From positions 1-64,000 of the IMG/VR virus record IMGVR_UViG_3300048625_000299: DNA of 64,000 nt; one strand, given 5' to 3'. The first letter of the stretch is position 1. Each line of letters begins with the position of its first letter. Below are positions 25,372 to 39,441 of this stretch, in pieces. The position numbers and the translations under genes are program-made. Under the pieces are notes generated by a model. The model made no database searches and had not been told where the DNA came from. It saw only the letters and a program-made list of their open reading frames with translations.

Positions 25372-25442
25372 TAGAATAGTTACAGCAACACACAAAGAAC
25401 ACCAAACTTTTAATTTGACATGTTCGTCAACGCTATTCTGTT
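25372..25442 (+). ncRNA. stem-cassette RNA A (Lys-UUU anticodon-loop-like cargo)
   Basis: TAGAATAG-TTAC-AGCAA ... CTATTCTG-TT. Confidence 0.75.
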
Positions 25443-25448
25443 ATATTT

Positions 25449-25523
25449 GGGGACAGTAGTGGGCTACGGTTCTCCCTTGCAAGGAGGATGTCTAGAAGGA
25501 TTCGATTTCCTCGGTCTCCACCA
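25449..25523 (+). tRNA. tRNA-Ala(TGC), minimal D-arm
   Basis: G3:U70, TGC loop, CCA. Confidence 0.7.
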
Positions 25524-25532
25524 ATTTTTTAT

Positions 25533-25607
25533 ACTGCGTTCGACTTCAGGTGAGGTCATCACCCTTTCAAGGTGACTAGACGGGTTCGATACCCGTACGC
25601 AGTACCA
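25533..25607 (+). tRNA. tRNA-Glu(TTC)
   Basis: Cloverleaf, CCA. Confidence 0.9.
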
Positions 25608-25612
25608 GTTTT

Positions 25613-25687
25613 CGGTTGTAAGCTTTGATGGCGAAGTACCCGGCTCTTACCCGGATTAACGGAGTTCGATTCTCCGACGACCGACCA
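25613..25687 (+). tRNA. tRNA-Lys(CTT)
   Basis: Cloverleaf, CCA. Confidence 0.85.
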
Positions 25688-25691
25688 GTTT

Positions 25692-25813
25692 TAGGATACT
25701 TGCAGCAATGACTTAAAAGTCAGTAGGTTCGATTCCTACATTTGGAGCTTTCCAAATCCGTCGTAAGGTACGACAAACGATTGAAACTCGTTCAACTAAA
25801 AAGGTATCCTGTT
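25692..25813 (+). ncRNA. stem-cassette RNA B (permuted tRNA-Phe-like cargo)
   Basis: TAGGATAC-TTGC-AGCAA ... GTATCCTG-TT; cargo order V, T, acceptor, D, anticodon(GAA). Confidence 0.8.
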
Positions 25814-25821
25814 GTATTTGT

Positions 25822-25896
25822 AGGGGGCTTGTCGTCTGGTGATGACACTACGCTTTGACCGTAGGAAGATGAGTTCGATCCTCATGCCCCCCGCCA
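25822..25896 (+). tRNA. tRNA-Gln(TTG)
   Basis: Cloverleaf, CCA. Confidence 0.85.
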
Positions 25897-25929
25897 GTTT
25901 TTGTTTAACTAATTTAATGGAGGCAGTCT

Positions 25930-26064
25930 ATGAAAAAGACGAAACCGATCGTGCGCGAACGTAACTGCTTCGTTCGATTAGCACTATTCCGTAAAGCAGG
26001 ATCGCACCGCAAGTCTAACAAGGCATTGCGTAAAGCGATCAACCAATCATCGTTGGGTTTATAG
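25930..26064 (+). CDS. small basic protein (44 aa)
   Basis: GGAGG RBS; MKKTKPIVRERN...KAGSHRKSNK; stop lies inside tRNA-Lys. Confidence 0.6.
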   Translation: MKKTKPIVRERNCFVRLALFRKAGSHRKSNKALRKAINQSSLGL

Positions 26065-26131
26065 TTTAACGGCAAAAACATCTGGCTTTTAACCAGTAAG
26101 AGTCTCGGTTCGAATCCGAGTAGACCCACCA
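26055..26131 (+). tRNA. tRNA-Lys(TTT)
   Basis: Cloverleaf, CCA. Confidence 0.92.
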
Positions 26132-26210
26132 TATGAAAGCATACTACCGAAGTTGGTTCGGTTAGACAGGGAGATCCAATTGCCTATGTCGTTAGTGTGT
26201 TTTTATATGG
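26129..26210 (+). ncRNA. long-stem structured element S3
   Basis: CCATATGAAAGCATACTA / TAGTGTGTTTTTATATGG. Confidence 0.55.
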
Positions 26211-26273
26211 TACGTAATTTGAGTACAATGGTCACACGCCCTTGCTTAGATTACAAACGCCATAATAATTTAT

Positions 26274-26349
26274 TCCATCTTAGTATTCTCGGTGAGTACG
26301 CCCGGCTGTTAACCGGAGAAGGTTGGTTCGAATCCAACAGATGGAGCCA
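26274..26349 (+). tRNA. tRNA-Asn(GTT)
   Basis: Cloverleaf, CCA. Confidence 0.85.
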
Positions 26350-26354
26350 GTTAT

Positions 26355-26413
26355 GGGGCAAAAAGCGGATTCTGTCCAATGAATCTTTTGCAGCACACTG
26401 TAATGCCCCGCCA
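26355..26413 (+). ncRNA. 59-nt D-armless tRNA-like mini RNA
   Basis: GGGGCA/TGCCCC-GCCA acceptor plus two hairpins. Confidence 0.5.
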
Positions 26414-26417
26414 AATT

Positions 26418-26481
26418 TAGGATCCTTTCAGCAAAACTTATACTTTCACTTTTGGCTGTGAAAAGCAAAGCGGATCCTGTT
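26418..26481 (+). ncRNA. stem-cassette RNA C
   Basis: TAGGATCC-TTTC-AGCAA ... GGATCCTG-TT. Confidence 0.75.
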
Positions 26482-26487
26482 GAACAT

Positions 26488-26565
26488 GCCCACGTAGTGC
26501 AATTGGTAGGAGACAACGGTCTTAGAAGCCGAACAGTGTCGGTTCGAATCCGACCGTGGGCACCA
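26488..26565 (+). tRNA. tRNA-Leu(TAG), short variable loop
   Basis: Cloverleaf, A73, CCA. Confidence 0.88.
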
Positions 26566-26568
26566 AAT

Positions 26569-26637
26569 TTATACACAGATGTTGGTTCGATTCCAACCCT
26601 GATGAAGAGTAGCATAATATGGCAATGCAGTGTATAA
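26569..26637 (+). ncRNA. stand-alone permuted tRNA-elbow mimic
   Basis: TTATACAC / T-arm / short linker / D-arm / GTGTATAA. Confidence 0.55.
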
Positions 26638-26688
26638 TCCAAGCCTCGCGCTGACTTGTCGCGTATAATGAGATAAATTACAAGTCAC

Positions 26689-26791
26689 TTTTCTAGAGCA
26701 TATCGCGGCTGAGGCTAGGCCGTTATGTGGATCATAGCTGGGCCTTTCGGCTTGGTCGCCAGTTCAATTCTGGTAGATGTGTTCTAGAAAA
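26689..26791 (+). ncRNA. cloverleaf-like element S4 with extended terminal stem
   Basis: 16-bp closing stem, D-like arm, GCCAG-TTCAATT-CTGGT T-arm, no CCA. Confidence 0.5.
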
Positions 26792-26795
26792 GTTT

Positions 26796-26870
26796 GGGCT
26801 GATAGTGATAATGGGAGCACAGTGGCTTTGCAAGCCTCGGGTCGGGGTTCGATCCCCCGTCGGTCCACCA
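26796..26870 (+). tRNA. tRNA-Ala(TGC)
   Basis: G3:U70, CCA. Confidence 0.88.
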
Positions 26871-26879
26871 AATTTTAAT

Positions 26880-26956
26880 CCGTCCGTAGCACAATTGGAG
26901 AATGTTCCGTCCTACGAAGTCGAGAGGTGGGGGTTCGAATCCCTCCGGACGGACCA
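26880..26956 (+). tRNA. tRNA-Arg(ACG)
   Basis: Cloverleaf with weak anticodon stem, CCA. Confidence 0.82.
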
Positions 26957-27105
26957 TACTATAGTGTATTCTTCGTCATATGCGGGGTTTCAGGTTCCAC
27001 GTCAAATGTGCCAGAATGAGAATAGTCCTGCAGGTTAATGCTCAGGGTAACACATTAATACTTACAGACAGGTTGACACTTGTTTGGGAATGCATTATAA
27101 TATGG
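26954..27105 (+). ncRNA. long-stem structured element S5
   Basis: CCATACTATAGTGTATTCT / GGAATGCATTATAATATGG. Confidence 0.5.
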
Positions 27106-27110: not shown

Positions 27111-27183
27111 GCGGGGTTAGTTTAGTGGTAAAACACTTTCCTTCCAAGTAAGAGTTGCGGGTTCGATTCCCGCACCCCGCTCC
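27111..27183 (+). tRNA. tRNA-Gly(TCC), no encoded CCA
   Basis: Canonical cloverleaf ending TCC-C. Confidence 0.9.
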
Positions 27184-27207
27184 CTTGAGTCGATGTCAAG
27201 ACTCGAA
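27182..27207 (+). repeat. 26-nt direct repeat, copy 1
   Basis: CCCTTGAGTCGATGTCAAGACTCGAA, identical to 28690-28715. Confidence 0.9.
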
Positions 27208-27223
27208 ACTTATAAATAAAAGT

Positions 27224-27763
27224 ATGGAAAAAACATACTATACAATTTATAAGATAACGAATCGGATTAATGGCAAGATCTATATTGGATCGCATAAGAC
27301 CAAAAATCTGAATGACAACTATATGGGTTCTGGAAAATACTTAAAGTATGCCCAAGACAAATATGGTATTGAAAAGTTTGAAAAAGAAATATTGTTCGTA
27401 TTTGATACGGCGCAAGAGATGTACGCTAAGGAAGCGGAAATTGTCAATGTTGAGTTCTTAGCTGAGCATAACACTTACAACATTAAAGTTGGAGGGTTTG
27501 GCGGTTGGGATCACATTAATAATGATGTAGAATTTCGTACGCAGAAAAATCAGCTAGCAAGGGCACGAGCTCAAGCTGCAGGGGCTTCGGATAAAGCAAA
27601 GTTATACAACACTGAACGGAGACGTCAGTATGATCTGAATCCAGCACGATGCGCTTCATGTAGCCAACCGCTTGATTTTTTAAAGCGCAAGAATAAATTC
27701 TGTGGGCATAGTTGTTCAGCTAAGTTGACCAACACCACTAGAGTTCGCAAATCGAACAAGTAA
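27224..27763 (+). CDS. GIY-YIG (Seg-like) homing endonuclease
   Basis: YTIYKITN...KIYIGSH, YMGSG, YN motif; late promoter at 27211. Confidence 0.9.
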   Translation: MEKTYYTIYKITNRINGKIYIGSHKTKNLNDNYMGSGKYLKYAQDKYGIEKFEKEILFVFDTAQEMYAKEAEIVNVEFLAEHNTYNIKVGGFGGWDHINNDVEFRTQKNQLARARAQAAGASDKAKLYNTERRRQYDLNPARCASCSQPLDFLKRKNKFCGHSCSAKLTNTTRVRKSNK

Positions 27764-28726: not shown

Positions 28727-29389
28727 ATGTGTATGTATTACACTGTTTATAAAACGACGAATAAGATTAATGGCAAGATCTATATTGGATCACATAAGAC
28801 CAAAAATCTTAATGATAATTACCTGGGTTCAGGTAAGTATTTGAAGCGTGCCATAGAAAAGTATGGAGTAGATTCTTTCACTAGGGAAATACTGTTCATA
28901 TTTGAAACAGCAGAGGAAATGTATGCTAAAGAGGCGGAGCTTGTGAACGCAGAGTTCCTAACTGAAGAAAATACATACAACCTCAAGGTTGGAGGTTTTG
29001 GTGGGTTTGACTATATAAATTCCAACCCCGAAAAATACCTAACGCCCAAGAGGCTTGCAGCGCTGATGCCTGGACATGAGTTGCAAAGGCGGCTGTGGGA
29101 AAAATATTATTCCGATCCTGCGTTTAGAGCCAAGCGCCAAGAGCAATCTAGACATGCTCTAAACGTAGCTAGAACAAAATCGCGTGCTCCCTTCAAAGGA
29201 CGCAAGCATTCGGATGTTGTAAAACAAAAAATAGCTGCAAAGGCTAGAGAAAGATCTGCAGATAATCCACAAGGAAACTCCCAGTATGGGACGATATGGA
29301 TTACAGATGGTGTTGAAAATAAGAAGATTAATAAAACTGATGTCTTACCAGATGGTTGGTATAGGGGCAGAGTTTTTAAAAAAGTATAA
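28727..29389 (+). CDS. GIY-YIG (Seg-like) homing endonuclease with NUMOD3-like segment
   Basis: YTVYKTTN...KIYIGSH; FKGRKHS; WITDG...GWYRGR; late promoter at 28720. Confidence 0.9.
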   Translation: MCMYYTVYKTTNKINGKIYIGSHKTKNLNDNYLGSGKYLKRAIEKYGVDSFTREILFIFETAEEMYAKEAELVNAEFLTEENTYNLKVGGFGGFDYINSNPEKYLTPKRLAALMPGHELQRRLWEKYYSDPAFRAKRQEQSRHALNVARTKSRAPFKGRKHSDVVKQKIAAKARERSADNPQGNSQYGTIWITDGVENKKINKTDVLPDGWYRGRVFKKV

Positions 29390-29716: not shown

Positions 29717-29720
29717 AAGT

Positions 29721-29940
29721 TTTGTAAGTGTCAGCAAGTGCAGTCACGCTAGTGATGGTAAGTTCGAACTACCTAACTAGTAAAAGGGGACGGGTTCAAC
29801 TCCCGGCTGATCGGAAGATCGGTGCAGATTGGTTGCTAACTGGACAGGTACCCAAGTGATATCCATCGCGTGACGGGGTCAGGCTAGGCGGCCGGTAGGT
29901 CCTGACTAAATCTACGATAAACGTGACGTAGGCTTACAAA
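29721..29940 (+). ncRNA. 220-nt structured RNA X with two T-loop-like hairpins
   Basis: TTTGTAAG-TGTC-AGCAA ... CTTACAAA; GTCACG/CGTGAC helix. Confidence 0.55.
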
Positions 29941-29949
29941 TTTAATTAT

Positions 29950-30024
29950 GGAGTAGTTAGTTTAGTGGCAAAACCGCGGGTTGTGATTCCGCTATCACGG
30001 GTTCGATTCCCGTACTTCTCCCCA
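29950..30024 (+). tRNA. tRNA-His(GTG)
   Basis: G-1:C73, CCA. Confidence 0.9.
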
Positions 30025-30141
30025 TATGAAAGTATTCTTGGTATAAGTCAAAGCGGAAGAAGAGACCCACGTGGATGCATACGCAACGGTCTCAGAGCTC
30101 AGTCTCCTTCTAGGCCTGCATTCGAGAGTGCTTTTATATGG
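30022..30141 (+). ncRNA. long-stem structured element S6
   Basis: CCATATGAAAGTATTCT / AGAGTGCTTTTATATGG. Confidence 0.55.
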
Positions 30142-30146
30142 CATAT

Positions 30147-30554: not shown

Positions 30555-30656
30555 TAGGATAGTTACAGCAAAACAAAACGCTTGTCATTGGTTGACAATT
30601 TGCCTTCTAAGCAAACCTAGCAGGTTCAATTCCTGCAGCAAAACAACTATCCTGTT
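30555..30656 (+). ncRNA. stem-cassette RNA F (acceptor-less tRNA-Arg(TCT)-like cargo)
   Basis: TAGGATAG-TTAC-AGCAA ... CTATCCTG-TT; D, anticodon and T arms in normal order. Confidence 0.8.
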
Positions 30657-30763: not shown

Positions 30764-30878
30764 GTCGCGATGGTGTAATGGTAGCACGCTATAAAAGGTG
30801 ATCCTGATTAGGATACGTGCAGCATACATTTTCCACTGTCAATGGAGATGCCCAGGTTCGATTCCTGGTCGCGACGCC
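30764..30878 (+). tRNA. tRNA-Asp(GTC) interrupted by a 42-nt insertion (30789-30830)
   Basis: GTCGCGA/TCGCGAC acceptor with D, anticodon and T arms intact; insert carries cassette motifs in swapped order. Confidence 0.75.
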
Positions 30879-30883: not shown

Positions 30884-30989
30884 TAGGATGAATGCAGCAA
30901 CATAAAAACTCTTCCACCATTCAGGGAGGCCGGCCCGCAGGGGGCATGTCGTTGGGTTCGAGTCCCGGTCTTAGACACATCATCCTGTT
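30884..30989 (+). ncRNA. stem-cassette RNA H (T-arm-containing cargo)
   Basis: TAGGATGA-ATGC-AGCAA ... TCATCCTG-TT. Confidence 0.78.
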
Positions 30990-31221: not shown

Positions 31222-31310
31222 GGAAGATACAGCTGTGTGGTCACAGCATCCGCCTGGAACGCGGACGGTTGGTTCTGCTGGCCGGAGTTCGACTCTCCTA
31301 TCTTCCTCCA
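31222..31310 (+). tRNA. tRNA-Ser(GGA)
   Basis: Class II, CCA. Confidence 0.82.
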
Positions 31311-31434
31311 TATAAAAGCTCTTTGAGCAGCTACACTGGAGTTCATCAAGTAACCGCCAAGTCGACTACGCGGTAAACGTTGCCAGGAAGTAGGGCTGCC
31401 ATGGATTCAAGTACCGCAGAGAGCCTCTATATGG
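31308..31434 (+). ncRNA. long-stem structured element S7
   Basis: CCATATAAAAGCTCT / AGAGCCTCTATATGG. Confidence 0.55.
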
Positions 31435-31933: not shown

Positions 31934-31934
31934 A

Positions 31935-32995: not shown

Positions 32996-33000
32996 GTTCT

Positions 33001-33090
33001 CCCGCTGTAGCTCAAGGAGAGCAGGGGGTCTTATAAGCCCTTAATCTAGATAAGGTCCAGGATGTGGTTCGATTCCACACAGCGGGACCA
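33001..33090 (+). tRNA. tRNA-Ile(TAT) with long variable region
   Basis: CTTATAA loop, A73, CCA. Confidence 0.8.
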
Positions 33091-33097
33091 AAAGTTT

Positions 33098-33300
33098 TAG
33101 GATCCATGCAGCAACATAAAATGCATTGAAAGCCTCGTGTTGGTGGTGCAAGTCCACCCTCCCTCACTAAGGGCACTTTATGGAGTGACCCGCCATACTA
33201 CTAAAGGATCGCAACCTGTAGTAATATCCAACGTATGGTATTGTGCCCTTAGTGAGGGAGTAGCTCAAGTAGTAGAGCAGAGTAAAAAGCGGATCCTGTT
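33098..33300 (+). ncRNA. stem-cassette RNA I (YrlA-like permuted module with 18-bp acceptor)
   Basis: TAGGATCC-ATGC-AGCAA ... GGATCCTG-TT; T-arm, CTCCCTCACTAAGGGCAC/GTGCCCTTAGTGAGGGAG, D-arm. Confidence 0.82.
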
Positions 33301-33307
33301 GTTTAAG

Positions 33308-33385
33308 GCCCAGGTAGTGCAATTGGTAGGAGACAACGGTTTCAAACGCCGTACAGTGTGGGTTCGAATCCCATCCTGGGCACCA
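33308..33385 (+). tRNA. tRNA-Leu(CAA), short variable loop
   Basis: Cloverleaf, CCA. Confidence 0.88.
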
Positions 33386-33400
33386 AATTGAAAGTTAATT

Positions 33401-33625
33401 ATGTTTAAGGTTTACTGGACAAGTGATGGTGGTGTACATGCAAGTACGTTCGACGGCTTGTCGGAAGCTATTAAAGAATGTGAAGTGTTACGTAAGGATG
33501 GAATGACCTTTGTTACGATGGTATCAGAGAATCCAAACTCAGTAGGCAAGCCTGGAGTAGATGCTGTCGTCGATGGCAAATGTCCAGACGGTGTAGATTA
33601 CACTTGGAAGAAGAGAAGAATATGA
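33401..33625 (+). CDS. conserved hypothetical protein
   Basis: FVTMVSENPNSVGKPGVD...YTWKKRR. Confidence 0.7.
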   Translation: MFKVYWTSDGGVHASTFDGLSEAIKECEVLRKDGMTFVTMVSENPNSVGKPGVDAVVDGKCPDGVDYTWKKRRI

Positions 33626-34329
33626 TCGGTCTAATTGGAAGAGGCGTTGTGGGTGGCGCAATCGAAAACGCCTACACTAAATTAAATCGTCCGCTTGTCG
33701 TTGTTGATAGGGGCGATGATTTCCGCGCACTCGACCAATGTACCATGATTTGGGTAGCTGTCCCCGAGTGGGAAATTGCTAATGTAGCAAGACAGGTCAC
33801 CAACCGCAATGCGCTGTATGTGATTAAGAGCACTGCAGTACCTGCTCAATTCGAAACGCTATTCAAGCGATTTGTATATGTGCCTGAATTTTTGACAGCA
33901 AAGAATGCCAACGCTGATTTCTTCAACCCACCGCTGCTTCCGATCGGAACAGATAATCAGCAAGATGCTGACATGGTGTTGGATGAGATGTTTGCATTGA
34001 ATGTATACTGCTATCATGCTAGATATGTGACAGTCGCTGAAGCGTCTGCCATTAAGTACTACGCAAATTCGTTCCTAGCAACAAAAGTGATATTCAACAA
34101 TCAGTTTGCGAACTATTGTGAAGACATGGGAGTTGAGTGGAATAAGATTGCAAGCGTTCTTGGTGAGGATACCCGACTCGGACATACGCACTGGCAAGTG
34201 CCTGGGCCTGATGGGCTGCCAGGATATGGGGGAGCATGCTTTCCGAAAGATGTCCGTGCATTGGTACATGCTACAGATCGGTTGACATTATTAGAACAAG
34301 TCGATATAATAAACAAATCGATGAGATAA
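33622..34329 (+). CDS. UDP-glucose/GDP-mannose dehydrogenase-like protein
   Basis: GRGVVG, IKST, PEFL, KYYANSFLATKV, GYGGACFPKD. Confidence 0.88.
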   Translation: MIGLIGRGVVGGAIENAYTKLNRPLVVVDRGDDFRALDQCTMIWVAVPEWEIANVARQVTNRNALYVIKSTAVPAQFETLFKRFVYVPEFLTAKNANADFFNPPLLPIGTDNQQDADMVLDEMFALNVYCYHARYVTVAEASAIKYYANSFLATKVIFNNQFANYCEDMGVEWNKIASVLGEDTRLGHTHWQVPGPDGLPGYGGACFPKDVRALVHATDRLTLLEQVDIINKSMR

Positions 34330-34333
34330 CAAT

Positions 34334-34408
34334 CTGGCGTTCGTTCAACGGATAGGACATTTCTCTTCTAAAGAAATTATGGGGGTTCGATTCCCTCACG
34401 CCGGACCA
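34334..34408 (+). tRNA. tRNA-Arg(TCT)
   Basis: Cloverleaf, CCA. Confidence 0.92.
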
Positions 34409-34413
34409 AATTT

Positions 34414-34488
34414 GCGTTCATAGTTCAACGGATAGAATTCAGTCTTCCGAAGTCTGAGATTGTGGTTCAATTCCACATGGACGCACCA
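34414..34488 (+). tRNA. tRNA-Arg(CCG)
   Basis: Cloverleaf, CCA. Confidence 0.88.
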
Positions 34489-34577
34489 TAATAAAACGTA
34501 AAAGCGGTGGTATGGGCCGGATCAACGAGCGAGTGCTTCCTACATGCAGGAGCGGCGATTGGTACGTTTTATTATGG
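34486..34577 (+). ncRNA. long-stem structured element S8
   Basis: CCATAATAAAACGTA / TACGTTTTATTATGG. Confidence 0.55.
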
Positions 34578-34722
34578 TAAGGTCACATCTGAAAAGAAAA
34601 CATCCCTTCGAAAAGGATTGTAGCAGTAAGACAAGATAAGCAGCGAGATTAGGTAGGTAAGGGATAGCGGCCCAACGTTACCACTTAGTTTGCTTAGTAA
34701 GGCGCACGAAAGGCAAACTGGC

Positions 34723-34751
34723 TTGACTTATCATAACTAATGAAGTATAAT
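34723..34751 (+). promoter_or_regulatory. sigma70 promoter
   Basis: TTGACT-N17-TATAAT. Confidence 0.7.
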
Positions 34752-34829
34752 GCGGCGGTAGTGCAATTGGTAGGAGACAAGAGACTTAAACCCTCTACAG
34801 TATGGGTTCGAATCCCATCCGCCGCACCA
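34752..34829 (+). tRNA. tRNA-Leu(TAA), short variable loop
   Basis: Cloverleaf, CCA. Confidence 0.88.
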
Positions 34830-34831
34830 AT

Positions 34832-34907
34832 GCGTTGGTAGCTCAATGGTTAGAGCAGTGGTCTCATAAACCATTGGTTACAGGTTCGAGTCCTGTCCGA
34901 CGCACCA
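34832..34907 (+). tRNA. tRNA-Met or Ile2 (CAT)
   Basis: Canonical, CCA. Confidence 0.92.
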
Positions 34908-34944
34908 TGTTATTTTTATGATGATTATTTTGAAAGGTGAATAT

Positions 34945-35715
34945 ATGACGAAGTTACACGAATTGCTGGCAGTTGAGAAAACACGCACATCAGCATCAAC
35001 GAAGATCTTGCAAGAGACTGTTCAGAAGTTCAGTAAATCTGAAATGTTCTCTGGTCAAGTTAAGACGTTGTCGATGATCGAAGACTCCCCAACAAACAAA
35101 GTGTTGGAAGCCACTGCTTATGAAGAGCGTGAGTTGCCAACAACTGTTGCAGAGACATTGAGCTATGCATTGAACATCTGGGCTACGGCTGAAGATGTGT
35201 TGATGCAAAAGAACTCAACCAACCAAACTGCTGTTGCAGACTTATTCTACAATGGCGAAGTGATCGCAGACAATGTTCCAGTTGATGAATTGCTCGGCTT
35301 GGAAAATCGTTTGGAAACATTGCGCAAAGTGTTTGAAGCAATGCCAACATTGTCTGCTGCAGTGTCTTGGGATCGTGACCTCCAATCAGGCCGTCAAGGC
35401 GCTTGGAAGGCAACTGATGTCGACAAGACAATCAAGACAGAAAAGACAACGGTGCCTGTTGTGTTGTACGAAGCAACTGACAAGCACCCAGCACAAGTTA
35501 AGGAAGTCAGTCAAGATAAGACTGTCGGTACTTTCAATATTGTGAAGTTCAGTGGCGCTGCTACATCTGCTCAAAAAGCAGAAGTGTTGGCAATCGTCGA
35601 TGAATTGCTCACTGAAGTGAAACAAGCACGTATGCGTGCAAACAGCGTTGATGCTGTCAATCGTCGAATTGGTCAAACATTGACTAAGTTGATCTTGGCT
35701 CCATTCAGCGTGTAA
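34945..35715 (+). CDS. uncharacterised helical protein upstream of a large ncRNA
   Basis: AAAGGTG RBS; MTKLHELLAVEK...ARMRAN; codon style resembles highly expressed genes. Confidence 0.8.
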   Translation: MTKLHELLAVEKTRTSASTKILQETVQKFSKSEMFSGQVKTLSMIEDSPTNKVLEATAYEERELPTTVAETLSYALNIWATAEDVLMQKNSTNQTAVADLFYNGEVIADNVPVDELLGLENRLETLRKVFEAMPTLSAAVSWDRDLQSGRQGAWKATDVDKTIKTEKTTVPVVLYEATDKHPAQVKEVSQDKTVGTFNIVKFSGAATSAQKAEVLAIVDELLTEVKQARMRANSVDAVNRRIGQTLTKLILAPFSV

Positions 35716-35735
35716 TGTAAAGAATTGTAAGTTTT

Positions 35736-36226
35736 TGAGGACAGCGTTATAGTTATCGTCAGATCGTAACGCACCTGATAACTCTAAATGTGGTGGTTCG
35801 AATCCATCCCCAAGCACAAATCGTAGTGATAGTATTATTTGTGCTTGGGTAGCCGAAGTGGTAGAGGCAAAGAGACGGGTGTAGAGATCAAGTATCGTTA
35901 TAGTAGTTGTATCGACCTCACAGACTTATTGTAAGGGTTTAACTTACCCGCCGGAGAGCTTATCCTTATACTAAACATATAAAGATAAACAAGATTATGC
36001 TGGTTCGAGTCCAGCCTGCGTCGCCAAAGTGATACGTAGATTGCTTTGGGACGCAGTGAGCAAATGGTAAAGCTGCTTGTTAATTAATACATCGTTATCG
36101 TAACGGCTCTAGTGTGCAAAACTAAGTTAAACGTGAAGAATCTTCACAAGAGACGCTTATACTCAACAGCTACGTTGTATAAGCGGTTCTTCTAAAGCGA
36201 TCTGTAAAAGATTTCTTCAGAAGAAT
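35736..36226 (+). ncRNA. ~500-nt structured RNA with two permuted tRNA modules
   Basis: T-arm, closed acceptor, D-arm modules at 35782-35875 and 35988-36081. Confidence 0.7.
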
Positions 36227-36228
36227 AT

Positions 36229-36303
36229 GGACGGTTATTTCAGCGGTAGAATATCACATTGACATTGTGAAGGTCACTGGTTCGATCCCAGTACCGTCCA
36301 CCA
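36229..36303 (+). tRNA. tRNA-Val(GAC)
   Basis: Cloverleaf, CCA. Confidence 0.92.
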
Positions 36304-36325
36304 TATTTTGAACATATATAATTGT

Positions 36326-36401
36326 AGCGGAGTGGAGAAGTGGTATCTCGTCAGTCTCATAAGCTGAAGATCGGTGGTTCGAATCCACCCTTTCGCAACC
36401 A
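36326..36401 (+). tRNA. tRNA-Met(CAT), initiator-like
   Basis: 1:72 mismatch, A11-U24, CCA. Confidence 0.85.
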
Positions 36402-36406
36402 AATAT

Positions 36407-36482
36407 TGGCATATAGCTCAGTCGGTAGAGCATTTGACTGTTAATCAAAGGGTCCCTGGTTCGAGCCCAGGTTTGCCAGCCA
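36407..36482 (+). tRNA. tRNA-Asn(GTT)
   Basis: Canonical, CCA. Confidence 0.95.
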
Positions 36483-36498
36483 ACGTAAAGGAATTGAA

Positions 36499-36579
36499 AT
36501 GAAATCAGAAGGTAGCGGTTACGCAGTCGAAGGTTGGGATGATATCACCAACGACGACCTCAATCCGATTGCAATTTAA
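36499..36579 (+). CDS. 26-aa acidic micro-protein
   Basis: AAGGA RBS; MKSEGSGYAVEGWDDITNDDLNPIAI. Confidence 0.4.
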   Translation: MKSEGSGYAVEGWDDITNDDLNPIAI

Positions 36580-36588
36580 TTCTCAAAC

Positions 36589-36664
36589 GCCGAAGTAGCA
36601 CAATTGGTAGTGCAGTGCTCTTGTAAAGCAAAGGTTGAGGGTTCAAGTCCTTTCTTCGGCACCA
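36589..36664 (+). tRNA. tRNA-Thr(TGT)
   Basis: Canonical, CCA. Confidence 0.93.
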
Positions 36665-36674
36665 AAAATTTAGA

Positions 36675-36745
36675 CGCGGGGAGTCAGGTGAGGAAGCAGT
36701 CTCATAAGCTCGTTTCAGAAGGTTCAAATCCTTCCCCCGCAACCA
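36675..36745 (+). tRNA. degenerate initiator-like tRNA-Met(CAT)
   Basis: CGCGGGG/CCCCGCA-ACCA, reduced D-arm. Confidence 0.65.
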
Positions 36746-36750
36746 CACAT

Positions 36751-36825
36751 GGTGATATGGCGTAGATGGATGCGCACTGGCTTCATAAGCCAAGGAGAGT
36801 GGTTCGATACCACTTATCACCACCA
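36751..36825 (+). tRNA. tRNA-Met(CAT)
   Basis: Cloverleaf, CCA. Confidence 0.85.
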
Positions 36826-36842
36826 ACACACAGGAGTTCGTT

Positions 36843-37031
36843 ATGTCAGATGGTGGAAAAGGGTCTGCACCAAGGCCTTTCAGTGTTAGCCAACAAGAAT
36901 GGGACAATCGCTGGGATGCGATCTTCTCGCGCGATCTTGATAAGAAACAAGAAGCACAGGAGAAGATTGAAATGCCAGGCACCACAGGTGGTGCAAAGAT
37001 CGTTTTTCCCGAAGACGAATCCAACAAATAA
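36843..37031 (+). CDS. conserved small phage protein
   Basis: AGGAG RBS; GGKGSAPRP...WDAIF. Confidence 0.7.
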   Translation: MSDGGKGSAPRPFSVSQQEWDNRWDAIFSRDLDKKQEAQEKIEMPGTTGGAKIVFPEDESNK

Positions 37032-37044
37032 TTAAATACCAAAA

Positions 37045-37080
37045 TAGTAGACCTTATAAATAAAAAGAAAAGGTCTACTA
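37045..37080 (+). promoter_or_regulatory. late promoter within a start-codon-sequestering hairpin
   Basis: TAGTAGACCTT...AAGGTCTACTA with TATAAATA at 37055. Confidence 0.75.
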
Positions 37081-37499
37081 TGAAAACATATAAATGTGTT
37101 TCGTGTGGTGTTGATGCTAAATTTGGGTATAGCAAGCTGAATAAGTTTTGCAGTAATATATGCCAAGGAGCATTTAAATGGCTCACGGAAACTGTTCCTC
37201 GTATTGAGCGAGGTGAGTGTGGGGAAGCTTCTACACTTAGAAAGTATTTAATTGAAAAGCACAGTGAGTGCTGTACACAATGTGGTACGACAGGCACTTG
37301 GCAAGATAAGCCACTAACGTTGCACGTTGACCATATAGATGGAAACAGCGATAATAATACAACAGATAATTTGAGACTGCTATGTCCTAACTGTCATTCC
37401 CAAACGGACACATGGGGAAGCAAGGGGCACGGTAGCAGACTCAAGAAGCAGTCTAAGCGTGCTATAAGCAGCAGACTGTATAGAGGTATGCCTCGGTAG
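37080..37499 (+). CDS. HNH homing endonuclease
   Basis: HVDHIDGNSDNN...LCPNCHSQT. Confidence 0.9.
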   Translation: MKTYKCVSCGVDAKFGYSKLNKFCSNICQGAFKWLTETVPRIERGECGEASTLRKYLIEKHSECCTQCGTTGTWQDKPLTLHVDHIDGNSDNNTTDNLRLLCPNCHSQTDTWGSKGHGSRLKKQSKRAISSRLYRGMPR

Positions 37500-37563
37500 T
37501 TTAATGGTAGAACGCCATCCTTACACGGTGGATACGGGAGTTCAATTCTCCAACGAGGTACCA
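37490..37563 (+). tRNA. tRNA-Val(TAC)
   Basis: Cloverleaf, CCA; overlaps HNH stop. Confidence 0.88.
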
Positions 37564-37567
37564 AATT

Positions 37568-37641
37568 GCTCTTGTCGTATAGTGACATTACACATCCTTG
37601 GTACGGATGTTACACGAGTTTGATTCTCGTCGAGAGCACCA
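37568..37641 (+). tRNA. tRNA-Thr(GGT)
   Basis: Cloverleaf, CCA. Confidence 0.82.
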
Positions 37642-37642
37642 G

Positions 37643-37671
37643 TTGCATATTATGTCGGTCTTCGATATAAT
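37643..37671 (+). promoter_or_regulatory. sigma70 promoter for cassettes J, K and the TROVE-like gene
   Basis: TTGCAT-N17-TATAAT. Confidence 0.6.
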
Positions 37672-37688
37672 AACGCCAACATAGAATT

Positions 37689-37926
37689 TAGAGTAGATTC
37701 AGCAAACCAAAAAATCCAGGAGTAACGTCCTGATTACTACCCCCTACCGTACCCCGAAAAGGGTTTCCGAAAGGATGGAGGGAATGCGTCAACCTAGTAA
37801 TAGGTTGGCTTTGTAGTCTTGCGAGATCAAGGATCGGGCGCCAACGATTGGCGATAGGGTCATGGGGCTATGGCAAGTGCCAGATGTGGATGACCAGAAA
37901 ATAATTACTGTCCCGCCTACTCTGTT
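37689..37926 (+). ncRNA. stem-cassette RNA J (long multi-hairpin cargo)
   Basis: TAGAGTAG-ATTC-AGCAA ... CTACTCTG-TT. Confidence 0.78.
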
Positions 37927-37931
37927 GTTTT

Positions 37932-37988
37932 TAGGTTAAGTTCCGCACAACAATTTCTATTCATAAAAGAGAAAAAGTTTAACCTGTT
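37932..37988 (+). ncRNA. stem-cassette RNA K
   Basis: TAGGTTAA-GTTC-CGCA ... TTAACCTG-TT, 19 nt before the ATG. Confidence 0.75.
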
Positions 37989-38007
37989 GATTGAAAAGGA
38001 GTTCATT

Positions 38008-39441
38008 ATGTCAACATTCGCTGAAGCTGTAGTAAACCAAGAAGCCCGTACCACGAATGGTATGGTGGCACGCAAGTCCACTGCAAATGCGTGCGTCGAT
38101 TTATTCTTCAAGATCGGTGCTTCCCGCGGTAAGGACATCACGAAGGATTTCGTGGCCGCATACGCTGAGAACAAAGATGTCGCGTTGCGCATCGCTCAAT
38201 GGGTCCGTGATGCTCGTGGTGGGGCAGGCGAACGTGATCTGTACCGCCAGATCTTGAAGTATCTCGAAAAGCACGATAAGGACGCTGCTGCAGCTTTGCT
38301 GTTGAAGACTCCTGAAATCGGTCGCTGGGATGATATCTTCGTGTTCGAAGACAAAGATTTGAAGGCTAAGGCTTTCACGATGTTGGGAGATGCTCTCCGC
38401 GTACGTAACGGTCTCGCTGCAAAGTGGACGCCACGTCAAGGTAAGCTCGCTGCTGAAATCCGGTCATTCTTCGGAATGTCCCCAAAGTTCTATCGTAAGT
38501 CGTTGGTTGAATTGACCAACGTTGTGGAACAACAAATGTGTGCAAAAGAATGGGATGCAATCAACTTCTCGCATGTGCCGTCCGTGGCTGCTGCTCGTTA
38601 CAAGAAAGCATTCAGCCGTAACACACAAGAGTATACCAAGTACGTTGCTGAGTTGATGAAGGATCCAAAGGATCGTAAAGTCAACGTCAAGATCAACGCT
38701 GGCGCTGTGTTTCCATATGATGTGTTGAAGGGCGTTATCGGTGCATACCGCAACAACTACAGCGCAACTGAACTCGGAGCATTGCAAGCTCAATGGGATG
38801 CGATGGAAAACTTCATCGGCGACGCAAACGTCTTGCCGTTGGTAGACGTGTCTGGTTCGATGTCATGTCGTGCTGGTGGTTCTGCTTCCCAAAGCACGAC
38901 TACTTGTATGGATGTCGCAGTGTCGCTAGGTTTGTACCTTGCTGACAAGAACAAGGGTAAGTTCAAGGATACGTTCTTGACATTCTCAGGTTCACCAGAG
39001 TTGCTGAACCTGAAGGGCAACATTGTTCAGAAAGTCCAACAAATGTCATCCTCTAACTGGGGTATGAACACAGACTTGGTGAAGGCGATGGATAAGATCT
39101 TGAGCACAGCCAAGAACGGCAATGTTCCTCAAGAAGAAATGCCAGACATGCTGTTGATTCTTTCAGACATGCAATTCGATCAATGCGCTCGTTTCGACGA
39201 CTCTGCAATGAAGATGATTGCACGTAAGTTCGAAGAAGCAGGCTACGAATTGCCAAAGATCGTATTCTGGAACCTGAACGCTGCGGACAATGTCCCAGTT
39301 AAGTACGACACTCGTGGTGTTGCTTTGGTGTCTGGCTTCTCGCCAGCTATCATGACGGCAGTACTCGGTGGCGATGCTGATAAGTTCACACCAGAAGCTA
39401 TGATGCTGAAGGCAGTGATGCTTCCACGTTACGATCTGTAA
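38008..39441 (+). CDS. Ro60/TROVE-like protein with vWA domain (DUF2828-type)
   Basis: RDARGGAGER, GRWDD, AAKWTPR, MIDAS DVSGSM, SDMQFD, VFWNL, VSGFS. Confidence 0.82.
   Translation: MSTFAEAVVNQEARTTNGMVARKSTANACVDLFFKIGASRGKDITKDFVAAYAENKDVALRIAQWVRDARGGAGERDLYRQILKYLEKHDKDAAAALLLKTPEIGRWDDIFVFEDKDLKAKAFTMLGDALRVRNGLAAKWTPRQGKLAAEIRSFFGMSPKFYRKSLVELTNVVEQQMCAKEWDAINFSHVPSVAAARYKKAFSRNTQEYTKYVAELMKDPKDRKVNVKINAGAVFPYDVLKGVIGAYRNNYSATELGALQAQWDAMENFIGDANVLPLVDVSGSMSCRAGGSASQSTTTCMDVAVSLGLYLADKNKGKFKDTFLTFSGSPELLNLKGNIVQKVQQMSSSNWGMNTDLVKAMDKILSTAKNGNVPQEEMPDMLLILSDMQFDQCARFDDSAMKMIARKFEEAGYELPKIVFWNLNAADNVPVKYDTRGVALVSGFSPAIMTAVLGGDADKFTPEAMMLKAVMLPRYDL

What the first reader, a model, noticed from the sequence alone, without database searches (positions are those of the whole stretch)
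25372..39441. Expanded Ro60/Y-RNA-like system: 10-12 RNA cassettes sharing one handle, linked to a TROVE/DUF2828-vWA gene
Seen: ten elements between tRNAs (starts 25372, 25692, 26418, 27768, 30337, 30555, 30884, 33098, 37689, 37932) share the layout T-run, 8-nt arm, NTNC(A/C)GCA, A-rich linker, variable cargo, complementary arm, TT. The arms covary: TAGAATAG/CTATTCTG, TAGGATAC/GTATCCTG, TAGGATCC/GGATCCTG (twice), TAGGATAG/CTATCCTG (twice), TAGGTTCA/TGAACCTG, TAGGATGA/TCATCCTG, TAGAGTAG/CTACTCTG and TAGGTTAA/TTAACCTG. The terminal pair is always U-G, which points to RNA rather than DNA structure. Elements are 57-238 nt long and many cargos mimic tRNA. The last two copies lie between a sigma70 promoter (37643) and the RBS of a Ro60/TROVE-like vWA gene. 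Known: bacterial Ro60 (Rsr) binds Y RNAs through a terminal stem, and YrlA-type Y RNAs carry a permuted tRNA-like module. Inference: the stem plus C(A/C)GCA is the protein-binding handle, and the phage makes a library of RNPs displaying different tRNA mimics. These could be decoys or adaptors against host anticodon nucleases, or serve RNA repair/quality control. I do not recognise this handle as a described Y-RNA motif.
Basis: partly seen in the sequence, partly recalled or inferred. Interest (0 to 1): 0.96.

Follow-up and report, generated by a model that had tools for sequence, protein, structure and literature searches.

The report
Ro60-like protein with tRNA-mimic RNA set
A T4-like phage encodes twelve small RNAs that share one conserved stem-plus-CAGCAA "handle" and display pieces of tRNA. 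The same handle RNAs sit beside the same Ro60-like (DUF2828) gene in many unrelated phage families, which points to an undescribed, widespread counterpart of the Ro60/Y-RNA particle.

Summary
All ten elements lie at the stated coordinates, with perfectly complementary, covarying 8-nt arms. The 5' motif occurs 11 times in the window against 0.12 expected, and nowhere else in the 235-kb genome.

I add two "closed" copies (30764-30878 and 26355-26417). In these the handle is a hairpin inside a tRNA-shaped RNA.

Cargos are tRNA parts: anticodon stem-loops, T arm + closed acceptor + D arm, or D + anticodon + T arms. Three of them have 7-nt loops identical to the loops of the phage's own tRNAs.

The gene at 38008-39441 is Pfam DUF2828+DUF7788. 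Its AlphaFold model (pLDDT 90.8) matches only Ro60/TROVE structures over its full length.

Handle RNAs flank this gene in 67 of 69 related metagenomic loci. They also flank it in KVP40, Cronobacter S13, a cyanophage, a FelixO1-like phage, Listeria P100, Campylobacter PC14, mycobacteriophage LeBron and Sinorhizobium phiM7. A handle model hits 8 of 9 DUF2828-positive named phages and 0 of 10 negative ones, including the canonical TROVE/YrlA phages.

A metatranscriptome shows about 40-60-fold excess depth over the 236-nt copy. Rfam has no matching family.

Physical binding and biological function are untested. The terminal U-G pair is not universal.

Verdict: a new Y-RNA-like family paired with a Ro60-like clade.

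The parts
25372..25440 (+). Open handle RNA 1 (69 nt). The cargo is a pseudoknot-like fold containing an anticodon-loop mimic, CAAACUUUUAAUUUG (loop CUUUUAA = Lys UUU).
   Evidence: (R1 53.3 bits)
25692..25811 (+). Open handle RNA 2 (120 nt). The cargo is a circularly permuted tRNA: hairpin, T arm, 7-bp acceptor closed by GCUU, D-like arm, and an anticodon arm mimic (loop UUGAAAC, GAA).
   Evidence: (34.6 bits)
26355..26417 (+). Closed handle RNA: a minihelix GGGGCA/UGCCCC + G + CCA that encloses the handle hairpin GGAUUC-UGUCCAAU-GAAUCU followed by UUUGCAGCA.
   Evidence: read directly from the sequence
26418..26479 (+). Open handle RNA 3 (62 nt), with a single hairpin as cargo.
   Evidence: 60.9 bits
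27768..27827 (+). Open handle RNA 4 (60 nt; CCGCA variant). The cargo GCUAAC..UAGC / UUGUC..GACAA is conserved with compensatory changes in relatives.
   Evidence: 52.2 bits
30337..30454 (+). Open handle RNA 5 (118 nt). Cargo: anticodon-arm mimic (loop CUUAGAA, UAG), T arm, 7-bp closed acceptor, D arm.
   Evidence: (37.9 bits)
30555..30654 (+). Open handle RNA 6 (100 nt). Cargo in native tRNA order: D-like hairpin, anticodon arm (loop CUUCUAA, UCU), T arm. The handle stands in place of the acceptor stem.
   Evidence: (41.9 bits)
30764..30878 (+). Closed handle RNA: a tRNA-shaped molecule with a 7-bp acceptor, D arm, variable hairpin and T arm. Its anticodon arm is replaced by ..AAAAG GUGAUCCUG-AU-UAGGAUAC GUGCAGCA.
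   Evidence: (Rfam tRNA 50.3 bits with a long insertion)
30884..30987 (+). Open handle RNA 7 (104 nt). Cargo: hairpins plus a T arm.
   Evidence: 36.1 bits
33098..33298 (+). Open handle RNA 8 (201 nt). Cargo: T arm, long acceptor-like stem with an insertion, D arm.
   Evidence: orthologues in L024, L037, L040
37643..37671 (+). Promoter-like site TTGCAT-17 nt-TATAAT, 18 nt upstream of element 9.
   Evidence: Read from the sequence. Not listed by the consensus scan because the -35 is 3/6. RNA depth rises in the bin starting at 37650. Similar promoters precede the arrays in L059 and P100.
37689..37924 (+). Open handle RNA 9 (236 nt), with a large structured cargo that is not tRNA-like. It is highly abundant in a metatranscriptome.
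   Evidence: (word depth 36,664 against about 600-890 in the flanks; the DNA run is flat)
37932..37986 (+). Open handle RNA 10 (55 nt, minimal). It ends 21 nt before the start codon and 9 nt before the RBS. It is a candidate operator for autoregulation as well as a free RNA.
   Evidence: 59.7 bits; an element ends within 60 nt of the start codon in 62/69 loci
38008..39441 (+). Gene for the DUF2828+DUF7788 protein (477 aa): a Ro60-like HEAT-repeat ring plus a vWA domain with an intact MIDAS site (D280, S282, S284, T355, D387 invariant). RBS AAGGAG at 37996-38001.
39484..39993 (+). Downstream PF04308 RNase H-like gene. It is the neighbour of the DUF2828 gene here and in KVP40, but not in P100, Alf5 or LeBron, so it is an accessory at most.

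Best explanation
The twelve elements are genes for a previously undescribed family of Y-RNA-like non-coding RNAs.

Shared module: an 8-bp stem (consensus U/A-A-G-G-A-U-N-N paired with N-N-A-U-C-C-U-G), followed on the 5' strand by a single-stranded N-U-N-C-A-G-C-A-A and an A-rich linker, and preceded on the 3' strand by an A-rich stretch.

Inference: this module is the docking site for the Ro60-like ring/vWA protein encoded at 38008-39441 (Pfam DUF2828+DUF7788).

The variable part of each RNA displays a fragment or a permuted copy of a tRNA. The forms seen are an anticodon stem-loop alone; T arm + closed acceptor + D arm; D + anticodon + T arms; or a whole tRNA body with the handle replacing the anticodon arm.

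The RNAs are made as part of the tRNA-operon transcripts, and from a dedicated promoter just upstream of the protein gene. They are probably released by cleavage in the conserved U-rich 7-nt spacers.

By analogy with Ro60/Y RNA, each RNP would use its tRNA-like cargo to dock onto tRNA-binding host or phage factors. Candidates are nucleases that attack the anticodon loop or the acceptor end, modification or repair enzymes, and PNPase-type exonucleases. The vWA/MIDAS face and the ring would then sequester, block or recruit those factors. The copy abutting the RBS would let the protein repress its own translation.

Shown: sequence and structure conservation, covariation, tRNA mimicry, the Ro60 fold, strict genomic linkage across phage families, and RNA accumulation of one copy.

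Inferred: binding, processing sites, the decoy/adaptor role and autoregulation.
For: Motif statistics:
- 11 matches against 0.12 expected, all on one strand.
- 10 of 11 have a perfect 8-nt complement within 240 nt.
- Arm pairs 2, 4, 5, 7 and 8 change on both sides across 50-68 diverse copies. These copies were selected for pairing.

tRNA mimicry:
- Folds are shown.
- 99 of 204 short cargos hold a 5-bp/7-nt U33-R37 hairpin, against 2.1 +/- 1.4 in shuffles.
- The 7-nt loops are identical to the phage's own tRNA-Lys, tRNA-Leu and tRNA-Arg loops.

Protein:
- AF2 pLDDT 90.8, pTM 0.90.
- The top 11 PDB matches are all Ro60/TROVE; the next hits are vWA-only at E>=0.017.
- MIDAS residues are invariant.

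Linkage:
- 323 forward against 9 reverse elements in 79 loci fetched by the protein.
- An element ends <=60 nt before the start codon in 62/69 loci, and lies <=300 nt on either side in 67/69. The two exceptions carry variant handles seen by eye.
- A pattern-first scan gave 24 records with complete elements. Of these, 20 hold the gene, including all 3 complete genomes, and the 4 without it are 15-62% fragments. None of 5 chance-match records holds it.
- Handles lie next to the gene in KVP40, S13, Ahp1, BUCT-ZZ01, Alf5, P100, LeBron, PC14 and phiM7.
- Model R2 hits 8/9 DUF2828+ and 0/10 DUF2828- named genomes.

RNA: the metatranscriptome X2 has depth 36,664 and 4,630 over 37650-38049, against about 600 and 890 in the flanks. 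The DNA run is flat.

Precedent: Ro60 binds upstream-encoded Y-like RNAs in Thermus phage phiLo (PMC12135203) and in bacteria and phages generally (PMC4201824).
Against: - No direct evidence that the protein binds the handle.
- The handle bears no resemblance to the known Ro60 sites (GGUCCGA; GNCGAAN0-1G), and none of the 12 RNAs contains either.
- Pfam TROVE does not hit the protein, and the PDB sequence-profile hits are only E 0.05-0.16.
- Co-occurrence is partly phylogenetic, and several positives in the R2 panel contributed training sequences.
- RNA depth comes from assembled contigs of one metatranscriptome, is elevated for one copy only (the 201-nt copy at 33098 is not elevated), and gives no ends.
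- In closed copies the two outermost 'pairs' cannot form, so the terminal stem end is not itself essential.
- The proposed targets of the cargos are unknown.
Confidence: 0.6

Rival explanations
1. The handle is recognised by something other than the DUF2828 protein, such as a host or phage processing nuclease, a chaperone like Hfq (A-rich linkers), or RNase E. The elements would then be stabilised spacers or by-products of tRNA-operon maturation, or free-standing tRNA decoys. The DUF2828 gene would simply be another tRNA-related gene kept in the same operon.
For: Elements start 3-4 nt after tRNA 3' ends and are separated by conserved U-rich 7-nt spacers typical of endonuclease sites. DUF2828 genes sit next to tRNA arrays in many phages, so both could be linked to tRNAs rather than to each other. 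No binding data exist.
Against: - Handles follow the gene even where no tRNA array adjoins it. LeBron has three directly downstream of gp53, and phiM7 has a minimal copy at the RBS.
- tRNA-rich phages without DUF2828 (T5, Bxz1, CcrColossus, S-PM2, phage G, T4) have none.
- Closed copies are embedded in mature tRNA-shaped bodies, not in spacers.
- The conserved single-stranded CAGCAA plus sequence-specific stem looks like a ligand site, not a cleavage site.
Confidence: 0.2
2. The elements are only cis-regulatory: 5'-leader operators or processing signals that control translation or stability of the DUF2828 mRNA. They would have no trans-acting role.
For: In 62/69 loci a copy ends within 60 nt of the start codon. 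Here the last copy ends 9 nt before the RBS.
Against: - Ten of the twelve copies lie 4.7-12.6 kb upstream, between tRNAs.
- In L076, L079, S13, Alf5 and LeBron the copies are downstream of the gene.
- Cargos are elaborate tRNA mimics under purifying selection.
- The promoter-proximal copy is far more abundant than the mRNA.
Confidence: 0.1
3. They are permuted or split tRNA genes. After cleavage and ligation at the handle and opening of the acceptor loop, as for the permuted tRNAs of Cyanidioschyzon, they would mature into functional tRNAs.
For: Open copies 25692, 30337 and 33098 have the order T arm - closed acceptor - D arm. The closed copy 30764 is what ligation of the ends plus opening of the acceptor loop would give. 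The phage has an Rnl2-type RNA ligase.
Against: The product would still carry the 8-bp handle and CAGCAA in place of, or beside, a normal anticodon arm. About half of the copies carry only an anticodon hairpin or non-tRNA cargo. The phage already encodes 40 conventional tRNAs, including the same anticodons.
Confidence: 0.04
4. They are DNA-level repeats: miniature mobile elements or homing-endonuclease targets spread through the tRNA region.
For: GIY-YIG and HNH homing-endonuclease genes lie among them. The arms are short inverted repeats.
Against: Strict single-strand orientation (11:0 here, 323:9 in relatives). The arms differ between copies but stay complementary, with G-U pairs allowed. 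The conserved core is asymmetric. There are no target-site duplications. The copies are orthologous and positionally conserved across distant phages.
Confidence: 0.02

Closest known systems
Ro60 (TROVE+vWA) / Y RNA ribonucleoproteins, including bacterial Rsr with Yrn1 and YrlA (Rfam RF00019, RF02553; Chen et al. 2014, PMC4201824)
   Same: - A ring-shaped HEAT-repeat protein with a C-terminal vWA/MIDAS domain.
- Partner RNAs encoded next to the gene.
- 5' and 3' ends paired in a stem that carries the conserved motif.
- A variable effector module that mimics tRNA in permuted order (T arm, closed acceptor, D arm), exactly the YrlA layout.
- More than one RNA per locus.
   Different: - The protein is about 14% identical to Ro60 and is not hit by Pfam TROVE.
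- The conserved RNA motif is NUNCAGCAA plus a UAGGAU/AUCCUG stem, not GGUCCGA or GNCGAAN0-1G.
- Rfam models do not score the RNAs.
- There are 12 copies per genome rather than 1-4.
- Cargos include bare anticodon stem-loops and native-order tRNA bodies.
- A second, closed topology exists.
- The RNAs are interleaved with real tRNA genes.
Phage-encoded Ro60 with Y-like RNAs: Thermus phage phiLo phiRo60-Yrl1/Yrl2 (PMC12135203; PDB 9KOP, 9L5Y); YrlA in mycobacteriophages, CcrColossus and Bacillus phage G (PMC4201824)
   Same: A phage carries the protein with two or more partner RNAs just upstream. A role in hijacking host RNA enzymes (PNPase) has been proposed.
   Different: Those are canonical TROVE proteins with CGAA-motif RNAs. 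Bxz1, CcrColossus and phage G have neither a DUF2828 homologue nor a handle match, so the two systems are separate lineages.
Listeria phage CKA15 (P100-like): abundant non-coding RNAs upstream of CKA15_055, speculated to be Y RNAs (PMC12282133)
   Same: CKA15_055 is the DUF2828 orthologue. P100 has three tandem handle RNAs between a strong sigmaA-type promoter and that gene.
   Different: The paper defines no motif. Its most active region (26,236-26,727) lies 0.6-1.1 kb upstream of the handle triplet (25,214-25,612 in cka15), so it is not direct evidence for these RNAs.
Phage tRNAs and tRNA repair as counter-defence against anticodon nucleases (T4 Pnk/Rnl1 against PrrC; T5 tRNAs against retron and PARIS effectors). 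This entry rests on my own knowledge and was not tested here.
   Same: tRNA-centred phage countermeasures encoded in tRNA regions. The anticodon loops are copied exactly.
   Different: These RNAs cannot decode, because they lack either the acceptor end or a normal anticodon arm. They carry a protein-type handle.
T4 species 1 and species 2 RNAs (rnaC, rnaD)
   Same: Stable tRNA-like RNAs of unknown function at the end of a T4-type tRNA cluster.
   Different: They have no handle motif. T4 has no DUF2828 gene and no R1 or R2 match.

Membership tests
Ro60 / TROVE protein family | Significant match to the Pfam TROVE domain (PF05731) | tested here: not met
   Pfam scan to E 0.1 gives only DUF7788 (1.3e-49), DUF2828 (3.8e-21) and weak HAM1_N and VWA_2.
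Ro60 / TROVE protein family | HEAT-repeat ring followed by a vWA domain, as in solved Ro60 structures | tested here: met
   AF2 model has pLDDT 90.8. Foldseek PDB top 11 hits are all Ro60/TROVE over the full length, E 4.5e-9 to 4e-6, TM 0.52-0.62.
Ro60 / TROVE protein family | MIDAS motif (DxSxS...T...D) in the vWA domain | tested here: met
   D280, S282, S284, T355 and D387 are invariant in 69 homologues. The weak profile hits to Ro60 align at this motif.
Ro60 / TROVE protein family | Binds Y RNA on the outer rim and misfolded RNA in the central hole | not testable with these tools
   Needs EMSA, CLIP or a structure.
Y RNA / YrlA (Rfam RF00019, RF02553) | Covariance-model score at or above the gathering threshold | tested here: not met
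   No hit at gathering. At E<=5 the only YrlA hits (21-28 bits against 69) lie outside the elements.
Y RNA / YrlA (Rfam RF00019, RF02553) | Ro60-binding motif GGUCCGA (animal) or GNCGAAN0-1G (bacterial) near the 5' end | tested here: not met
   Absent from all 12 RNAs. NUNCAGCAA takes its place.
Y RNA / YrlA (Rfam RF00019, RF02553) | 5' and 3' ends paired in a terminal stem | tested here: met
   8-bp stem with compensatory changes. Not met for the two closed copies.
Y RNA / YrlA (Rfam RF00019, RF02553) | tRNA-like module in the order T arm - acceptor stem-loop - D arm | tested here: met
   Present in 25692, 30337 and 33098. The other copies carry different tRNA parts.
Y RNA / YrlA (Rfam RF00019, RF02553) | Encoded adjacent to the Ro60 orthologue | tested here: met
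   Adjacent to the Ro60-like DUF2828 gene in 67/69 loci and in 9 named phages.
tRNA (RF00005) | Cloverleaf with a 5-bp anticodon stem, 7-nt loop and open acceptor end | tested here: not met
   The closed copy 30764-30876 scores 50.3 bits only with a roughly 40-nt insertion replacing the anticodon arm. Open copies have closed or missing acceptor stems.

The most novel reading that the evidence does not exclude
DUF2828 proteins and CAGCAA-handle RNAs form a modular display system found in hundreds of phages, including FelixO1-like, P100/A511, KVP40-like, Campylobacter, cluster L and cyanophage groups. One Ro60-like scaffold would be loaded with a genome-encoded library of RNAs. Each RNA would present a different tRNA fragment: exact anticodon loops, the acceptor/T-arm elbow, or a whole body. 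Together they would act as decoys or traps that neutralise the host's tRNA-targeting immune effectors, namely anticodon nucleases and acceptor-end toxins. The library content would then track the defence repertoire of the host.
Probability: 0.3. Interest if true: 0.92.

Novelty: new variant of a known kind. Interest (0 to 1): 0.85.

Why it matters
It would give the large orphan DUF2828 family (PHROG 850 'RNA-binding protein') a cognate RNA and a testable role. The family has 6,120 clusters at 50% identity and homologues in 709 isolate phage genomes.

It extends the Ro60/Y-RNA paradigm to a second, sequence-unrelated handle.

It explains long 'aberrant' or 'pseudo' tRNAs annotated in RefSeq phage genomes.

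It offers a tractable system, in model phages with genetics, for a long-open question: what the tRNA-like modules of Y RNAs are for.

If the decoy reading holds, it would be a new class of RNA-based anti-defence.

Tried and rejected
- Rfam at gathering and at E<=5: nothing but tRNA. The YrlA hits fall elsewhere.
- PDB sequence search: no hit with the single sequence, and only E 0.05-0.16 with the profile. The fold search was needed.
- T4 rnaC/rnaD as relatives: no handle.
- PF04308 RNase H-like neighbour as the universal partner: conserved in KVP40 but absent next to the gene in P100, Alf5, LeBron and PC14.
- RtcB or Rnl1 linkage: absent from the genome. Only an Rnl2-type ligase is present, 55 kb away.
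- Consensus structure of the long promoter-proximal cargo: 24 orthologues align only at the handle, so there is no shared fold.
- Using the CKA15 transcriptome paper as direct evidence: its named hot region is not the handle triplet.
- Supplement of Chen 2014, to see whether cluster L phages were included: not held.
- Model R1, trained on short copies, misses the 201- and 236-nt copies. Model R2 under strict filters missed phiM7, although copies there are visible by eye.
- A loose scan for closed forms is noisy. Only the two copies in the tRNA region are credible.

Full report
CONTEXT. The window is the first 64 kb of a complete, terminally redundant 234,864-bp virus record from a freshwater metagenome. 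The phage is a T4-like myovirus, with gp20 portal, gp23 capsid, UvsW, gp43 polymerase and UvsX. Between 24.9 and 37.6 kb it carries 40 tRNA genes on the + strand. These are interspersed with GIY-YIG and HNH homing-endonuclease ORFs and an RF-1-domain ORF.

- Each of the ten starts has TAG + 5 nt + NTNC(A/C)GCA, and the exact reverse complement of arm positions 2-8 followed by G lies 47-228 nt downstream.
- The 16-nt degenerate pattern occurs 11 times in the window, all on the + strand, against 0.12 +/- 0.36 in shuffles. In the whole genome it occurs 11 times forward and 0 times reverse, all in the tRNA region.
- A covariance model built from short relatives (R1) recovers eight of the ten at 35-61 bits and nothing else in the genome. 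The 201- and 236-nt copies are missed because of their inserts.

TWO CLOSED COPIES. The 11th pattern match (30809) lies inside a tRNA-shaped RNA at 30764-30878. This RNA has a perfect 7-bp acceptor stem, a D arm, a variable hairpin and a T arm. In place of the anticodon arm it reads ..AAAAG GUGAUCCUG-AU-UAGGAUAC GUGCAGCA.., which is the handle with its two ends joined by 2 nt. A second closed copy sits in a CCA-ended minihelix at 26355-26417. The locus therefore holds 10 open and 2 closed copies.

ANATOMY OF THE HANDLE. From 263 unique copies in this and related phages the consensus is:
(A)GUUU | U-A-G-G-A-U-N-N | N-U-N-C-A-G-C-A-A, A-rich ... A-rich (AAAAN) | N-N-A-U-C-C-U-G | UUGUUU.
Tandem copies are spaced by exactly 7 nt. 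Pairs 2, 4, 5, 7 and 8 change on both sides. These sets were selected for complementarity, so the independent evidence for pairing is the 10-of-11 result above.

In more distant relatives position 1 is A (A*G) or C. In closed copies the outer two pairs cannot form at all. The truly invariant features are CAGCA(A), placed 3-4 nt after the 5' arm, and the 3'-terminal G.

CARGOS ARE tRNA PARTS.
- Element 25692 has a hairpin, a T arm, a 7-bp acceptor closed by a tetraloop, a D-like arm and an anticodon-arm mimic (GAA).
- Element 30337 has an anticodon-arm mimic (UAG), a T arm, a closed acceptor and a D arm.
- Element 30555 has a D-like hairpin, an anticodon arm (UCU) and a T arm in native order, with the handle in place of the acceptor stem.
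- Element 33098 has a T arm, a long acceptor-like stem and a D arm.

Across relatives, 99 of 204 short copies (<=75 nt) carry a 5-bp stem with a 7-nt loop that has U33 and a purine at 37, against 2.1 +/- 1.4 in shuffles. The commonest loops are CUUGUAA, CUUUUAA, CUGUUAA, CUUCUAA and CUGGAAA.

In this window the mimic loops of 25372, 30337 and 30555 are identical to the 7-nt anticodon loops of the phage's own tRNA-Lys(UUU), tRNA-Leu(UAG) and tRNA-Arg(UCU). The loop of 25692 matches tRNA-Phe(GAA) at 6 of 7 positions. The stems differ. The 236-nt copy has a large cargo that is not tRNA-like, and its orthologues share no common fold.

THE PROTEIN.
- The 477-aa product of 38008-39441 matches Pfam DUF7788 (1.3e-49) and the C-terminal part of DUF2828 (3.8e-21), but not TROVE. 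It belongs to PHROG 850, 'RNA-binding protein'.
- The family is very large: 6,120 representatives at 50% clustering and homologues in 709 isolate phage records.
- An AlphaFold2 model built on 69 homologues is confident, with pLDDT 90.8 and pTM 0.90.
- Its eleven best PDB matches are all Ro60/TROVE proteins: Xenopus and human Ro60, Deinococcus Rsr, and Thermus phage phiLo Ro60. They have E 4.5e-9 to 4e-6 and TM 0.52-0.62 over the full length at about 14% identity. The next matches are isolated vWA domains at E>=0.017.
- The MIDAS residues are invariant.

The protein is therefore Ro60-like by fold, although sequence models do not place it in TROVE.

LINKAGE BETWEEN HANDLE AND GENE. This is the main evidence for a partnership.
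(i) In 79 IMG/VR loci retrieved by the protein (41-94% identity), a strict scan finds 323 elements on the gene's strand and 9 on the other. In 62 of 69 loci with enough upstream sequence an element ends within 60 nt of the start codon. In 67 of 69 one lies within 300 nt on either side. The two exceptions have variant handles visible by eye.
(ii) Going the other way, a pattern scan of IMG/VR gave 118 loci, of which 101 hold complete elements. Of 24 tested records with complete elements, 20 hold the gene, including all three complete genomes (168-424 kb). The four without it are 15-62% fragments. None of five records with only a chance pattern match holds it.
(iii) Variant handles lie beside the gene in named phages of very different lineages: KVP40, Cronobacter S13, Aeromonas Ahp1 (Straboviridae), Synechococcus BUCT-ZZ01 (Kyanoviridae), FelixO1-like Alf5, Listeria P100 (Herelleviridae), Campylobacter PC14, mycobacteriophage LeBron and Sinorhizobium phiM7. 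Protein identity to the window falls to about 32% in this set.
(iv) In S13, Ahp1 and BUCT-ZZ01 the closed form dominates. RefSeq annotates these copies as 113-121-nt 'tRNA-Ser/OTHER' or 'tRNA-Pseudo'.
(v) A broader model (R2) hit 8 of 9 DUF2828-positive named genomes and 0 of 10 DUF2828-negative ones: T4, T5, Bxz1, CcrColossus, S-PM2, phiKZ, RaK2, phage G, phage K and SPO1.

Two caveats apply to (v). Six of the positives contributed training sequences. However, the hits in KVP40, S13 and Ahp1, and two of the hits in BUCT-ZZ01, are independent, and R1, which was trained only on metagenomic T4-like copies, already found copies in KVP40, BUCT-ZZ01, P100, Alf5 and PC14. The canonical TROVE/YrlA phages (Bxz1, CcrColossus, phage G) have neither the gene nor the handle, so this is a separate protein-RNA lineage.

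EXPRESSION. One freshwater metatranscriptome (X2) covers 97% of the sampled words of 33000-39500. Its assembled-contig word depth is 36,664 in 37650-37849 and 4,630 in 37850-38049. It is about 600 upstream and about 890 over the gene. A DNA run from the likely source sample is flat at 250-300.

The 236-nt copy downstream of TTGCAT-17-TATAAT therefore accumulates far above its neighbours. The measure is coarse: it comes from contigs of one run and gives no ends. The 201-nt copy at 33098 shows no excess. tRNA-sized and heavily structured RNAs are poorly captured by such libraries.

WHAT IS KNOWN.
- Ro60 binds Y RNAs through a terminal stem. Bacterial YrlA carries a permuted tRNA-like module and the motif GNCGAAN0-1G, and is encoded next to Ro60 in more than 250 bacteria and phages (PMC4201824).
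- Thermus phage phiLo Ro60 binds two upstream Y-like RNAs and assembles with host PNPase (PMC12135203).
- A comparative study noted TROVE proteins in some jumbo phages (PMC7824862).
- For the P100-like phage CKA15, three very abundant non-coding regions upstream of the DUF2828 orthologue were tentatively called Y RNAs, and the protein was found in virions (PMC12282133). No motif was defined. The paper's named hot region lies 0.6-1.1 kb upstream of the handle triplet I find.
- LeBron gp53 ('Ro-like') is moderately toxic when overexpressed (PMC13148394).
- I found no paper and no Rfam family describing the CAGCAA handle.

MECHANISM (inference). The layout parallels Y RNAs: a stem plus a conserved single-stranded motif, with a variable effector module. 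Together with the Ro60 fold and the strict linkage, this makes the DUF2828 protein the most likely ligand of the handle. I put this at about 0.6.

The cargos copy anticodon loops exactly and reproduce the acceptor/T-arm elbow, which points to tRNA-binding factors as targets. Whether the RNP decoys tRNA-targeting defence nucleases, tethers an exonuclease as in RYPER, or serves tRNA quality control or repair cannot be decided here. The genome has an Rnl2-type ligase but no RtcB.

The copy abutting the RBS suggests autoregulation. The rival readings (another ligand or processing signal, a purely cis role, permuted tRNA genes, DNA repeats) are weighed in the rivals section of this report.

VERDICT. 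It is best described as a new, widespread Y-RNA-like family paired with a Ro60-like (DUF2828) protein clade. Its unusual features are many copies per genome, modular tRNA-part cargos and two topologies. Binding and function need experiments.

Noticed in passing
window 26132-26273 and 30025-30146 (also 31307-31432): Strongly folded, unannotated spacers that begin TATGAAAG.AT.CT and end TTTTATATGG. They may be a second repeated RNA family in the tRNA region, without the handle.
   Followed up: no
window 24998-25123: A 126-nt hairpin closed by an 18-bp perfect inverted repeat (TTAATTAAAATCTCTGTA...), lying between two tRNAs.
   Followed up: no
window 26566-26645: A handle-less permuted tRNA-like RNA with stem UAUACAC/GUGUAUA, a T arm, a CUGAUGA-containing linker and a D-like arm. 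It is the best, but still weak, Rfam YrlA hit at 23.8 bits, E 0.25.
   Followed up: partly
window 25441-25532, 36665-36750, 29717-29950: Further tRNA-like or highly structured RNAs that fall below the tRNA-finder thresholds. The 234-nt stretch folds at -70 kcal/mol.
   Followed up: no
window 27155-27763, 28727-29389, 37080-37499: Two SegE-like GIY-YIG ORFs and one HNH homing-endonuclease ORF embedded in the tRNA array.
   Followed up: no
window 32259-32609 (with 31934-32258 upstream): A 116-aa ORF consisting of an RF-1 domain only (ArfB / peptidyl-tRNA-hydrolase-like) inside the tRNA region, preceded by a 325-nt strongly folded stretch.
   Followed up: no
window 33580-34329: An ORF matching only the central domain of UDP-glucose/GDP-mannose dehydrogenase. 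It may be a fragment or a repurposed domain.
   Followed up: no
window 39484-39993; L206 6949-7479 (KVP40.0299): A PF04308 RNase H-like gene directly follows the DUF2828 gene both here and in KVP40. Here it is followed in turn by Hsp20 and a GNAT acetyltransferase.
   Followed up: partly
L208 5812-5932 and 5942-6054 (Cronobacter phage S13); L209 7170-7283 (Aeromonas phage Ahp1); L210 5180-5430 (Synechococcus phage BUCT-ZZ01): RNAs annotated, or annotatable, as over-long tRNA-Ser, tRNA-OTHER or tRNA-Pseudo are closed handle RNAs. They are tRNA bodies whose anticodon arm is replaced by the handle hairpin plus AUUC(A/U)GCA.
   Followed up: yes
L212 2960-4029 (Listeria phage P100): Two long non-coding stretches, each behind a strong TTGACA-type promoter, lie upstream of the handle triplet and lack the handle. 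They probably correspond to the most abundant CKA15 RNAs reported in PMC12282133.
   Followed up: partly
PMC12282133, Table 1: The DUF2828 orthologue of Listeria phage CKA15 was detected in purified virions at 57% sequence coverage. This raises the possibility that the protein or RNP is packaged and delivered with the DNA.
   Followed up: no
L214 (Campylobacter phage PC14), record 41544-42038: A second, partial DUF2828-like ORF (profile positions 44-207, E 8.8e-35) elsewhere in the genome.
   Followed up: no
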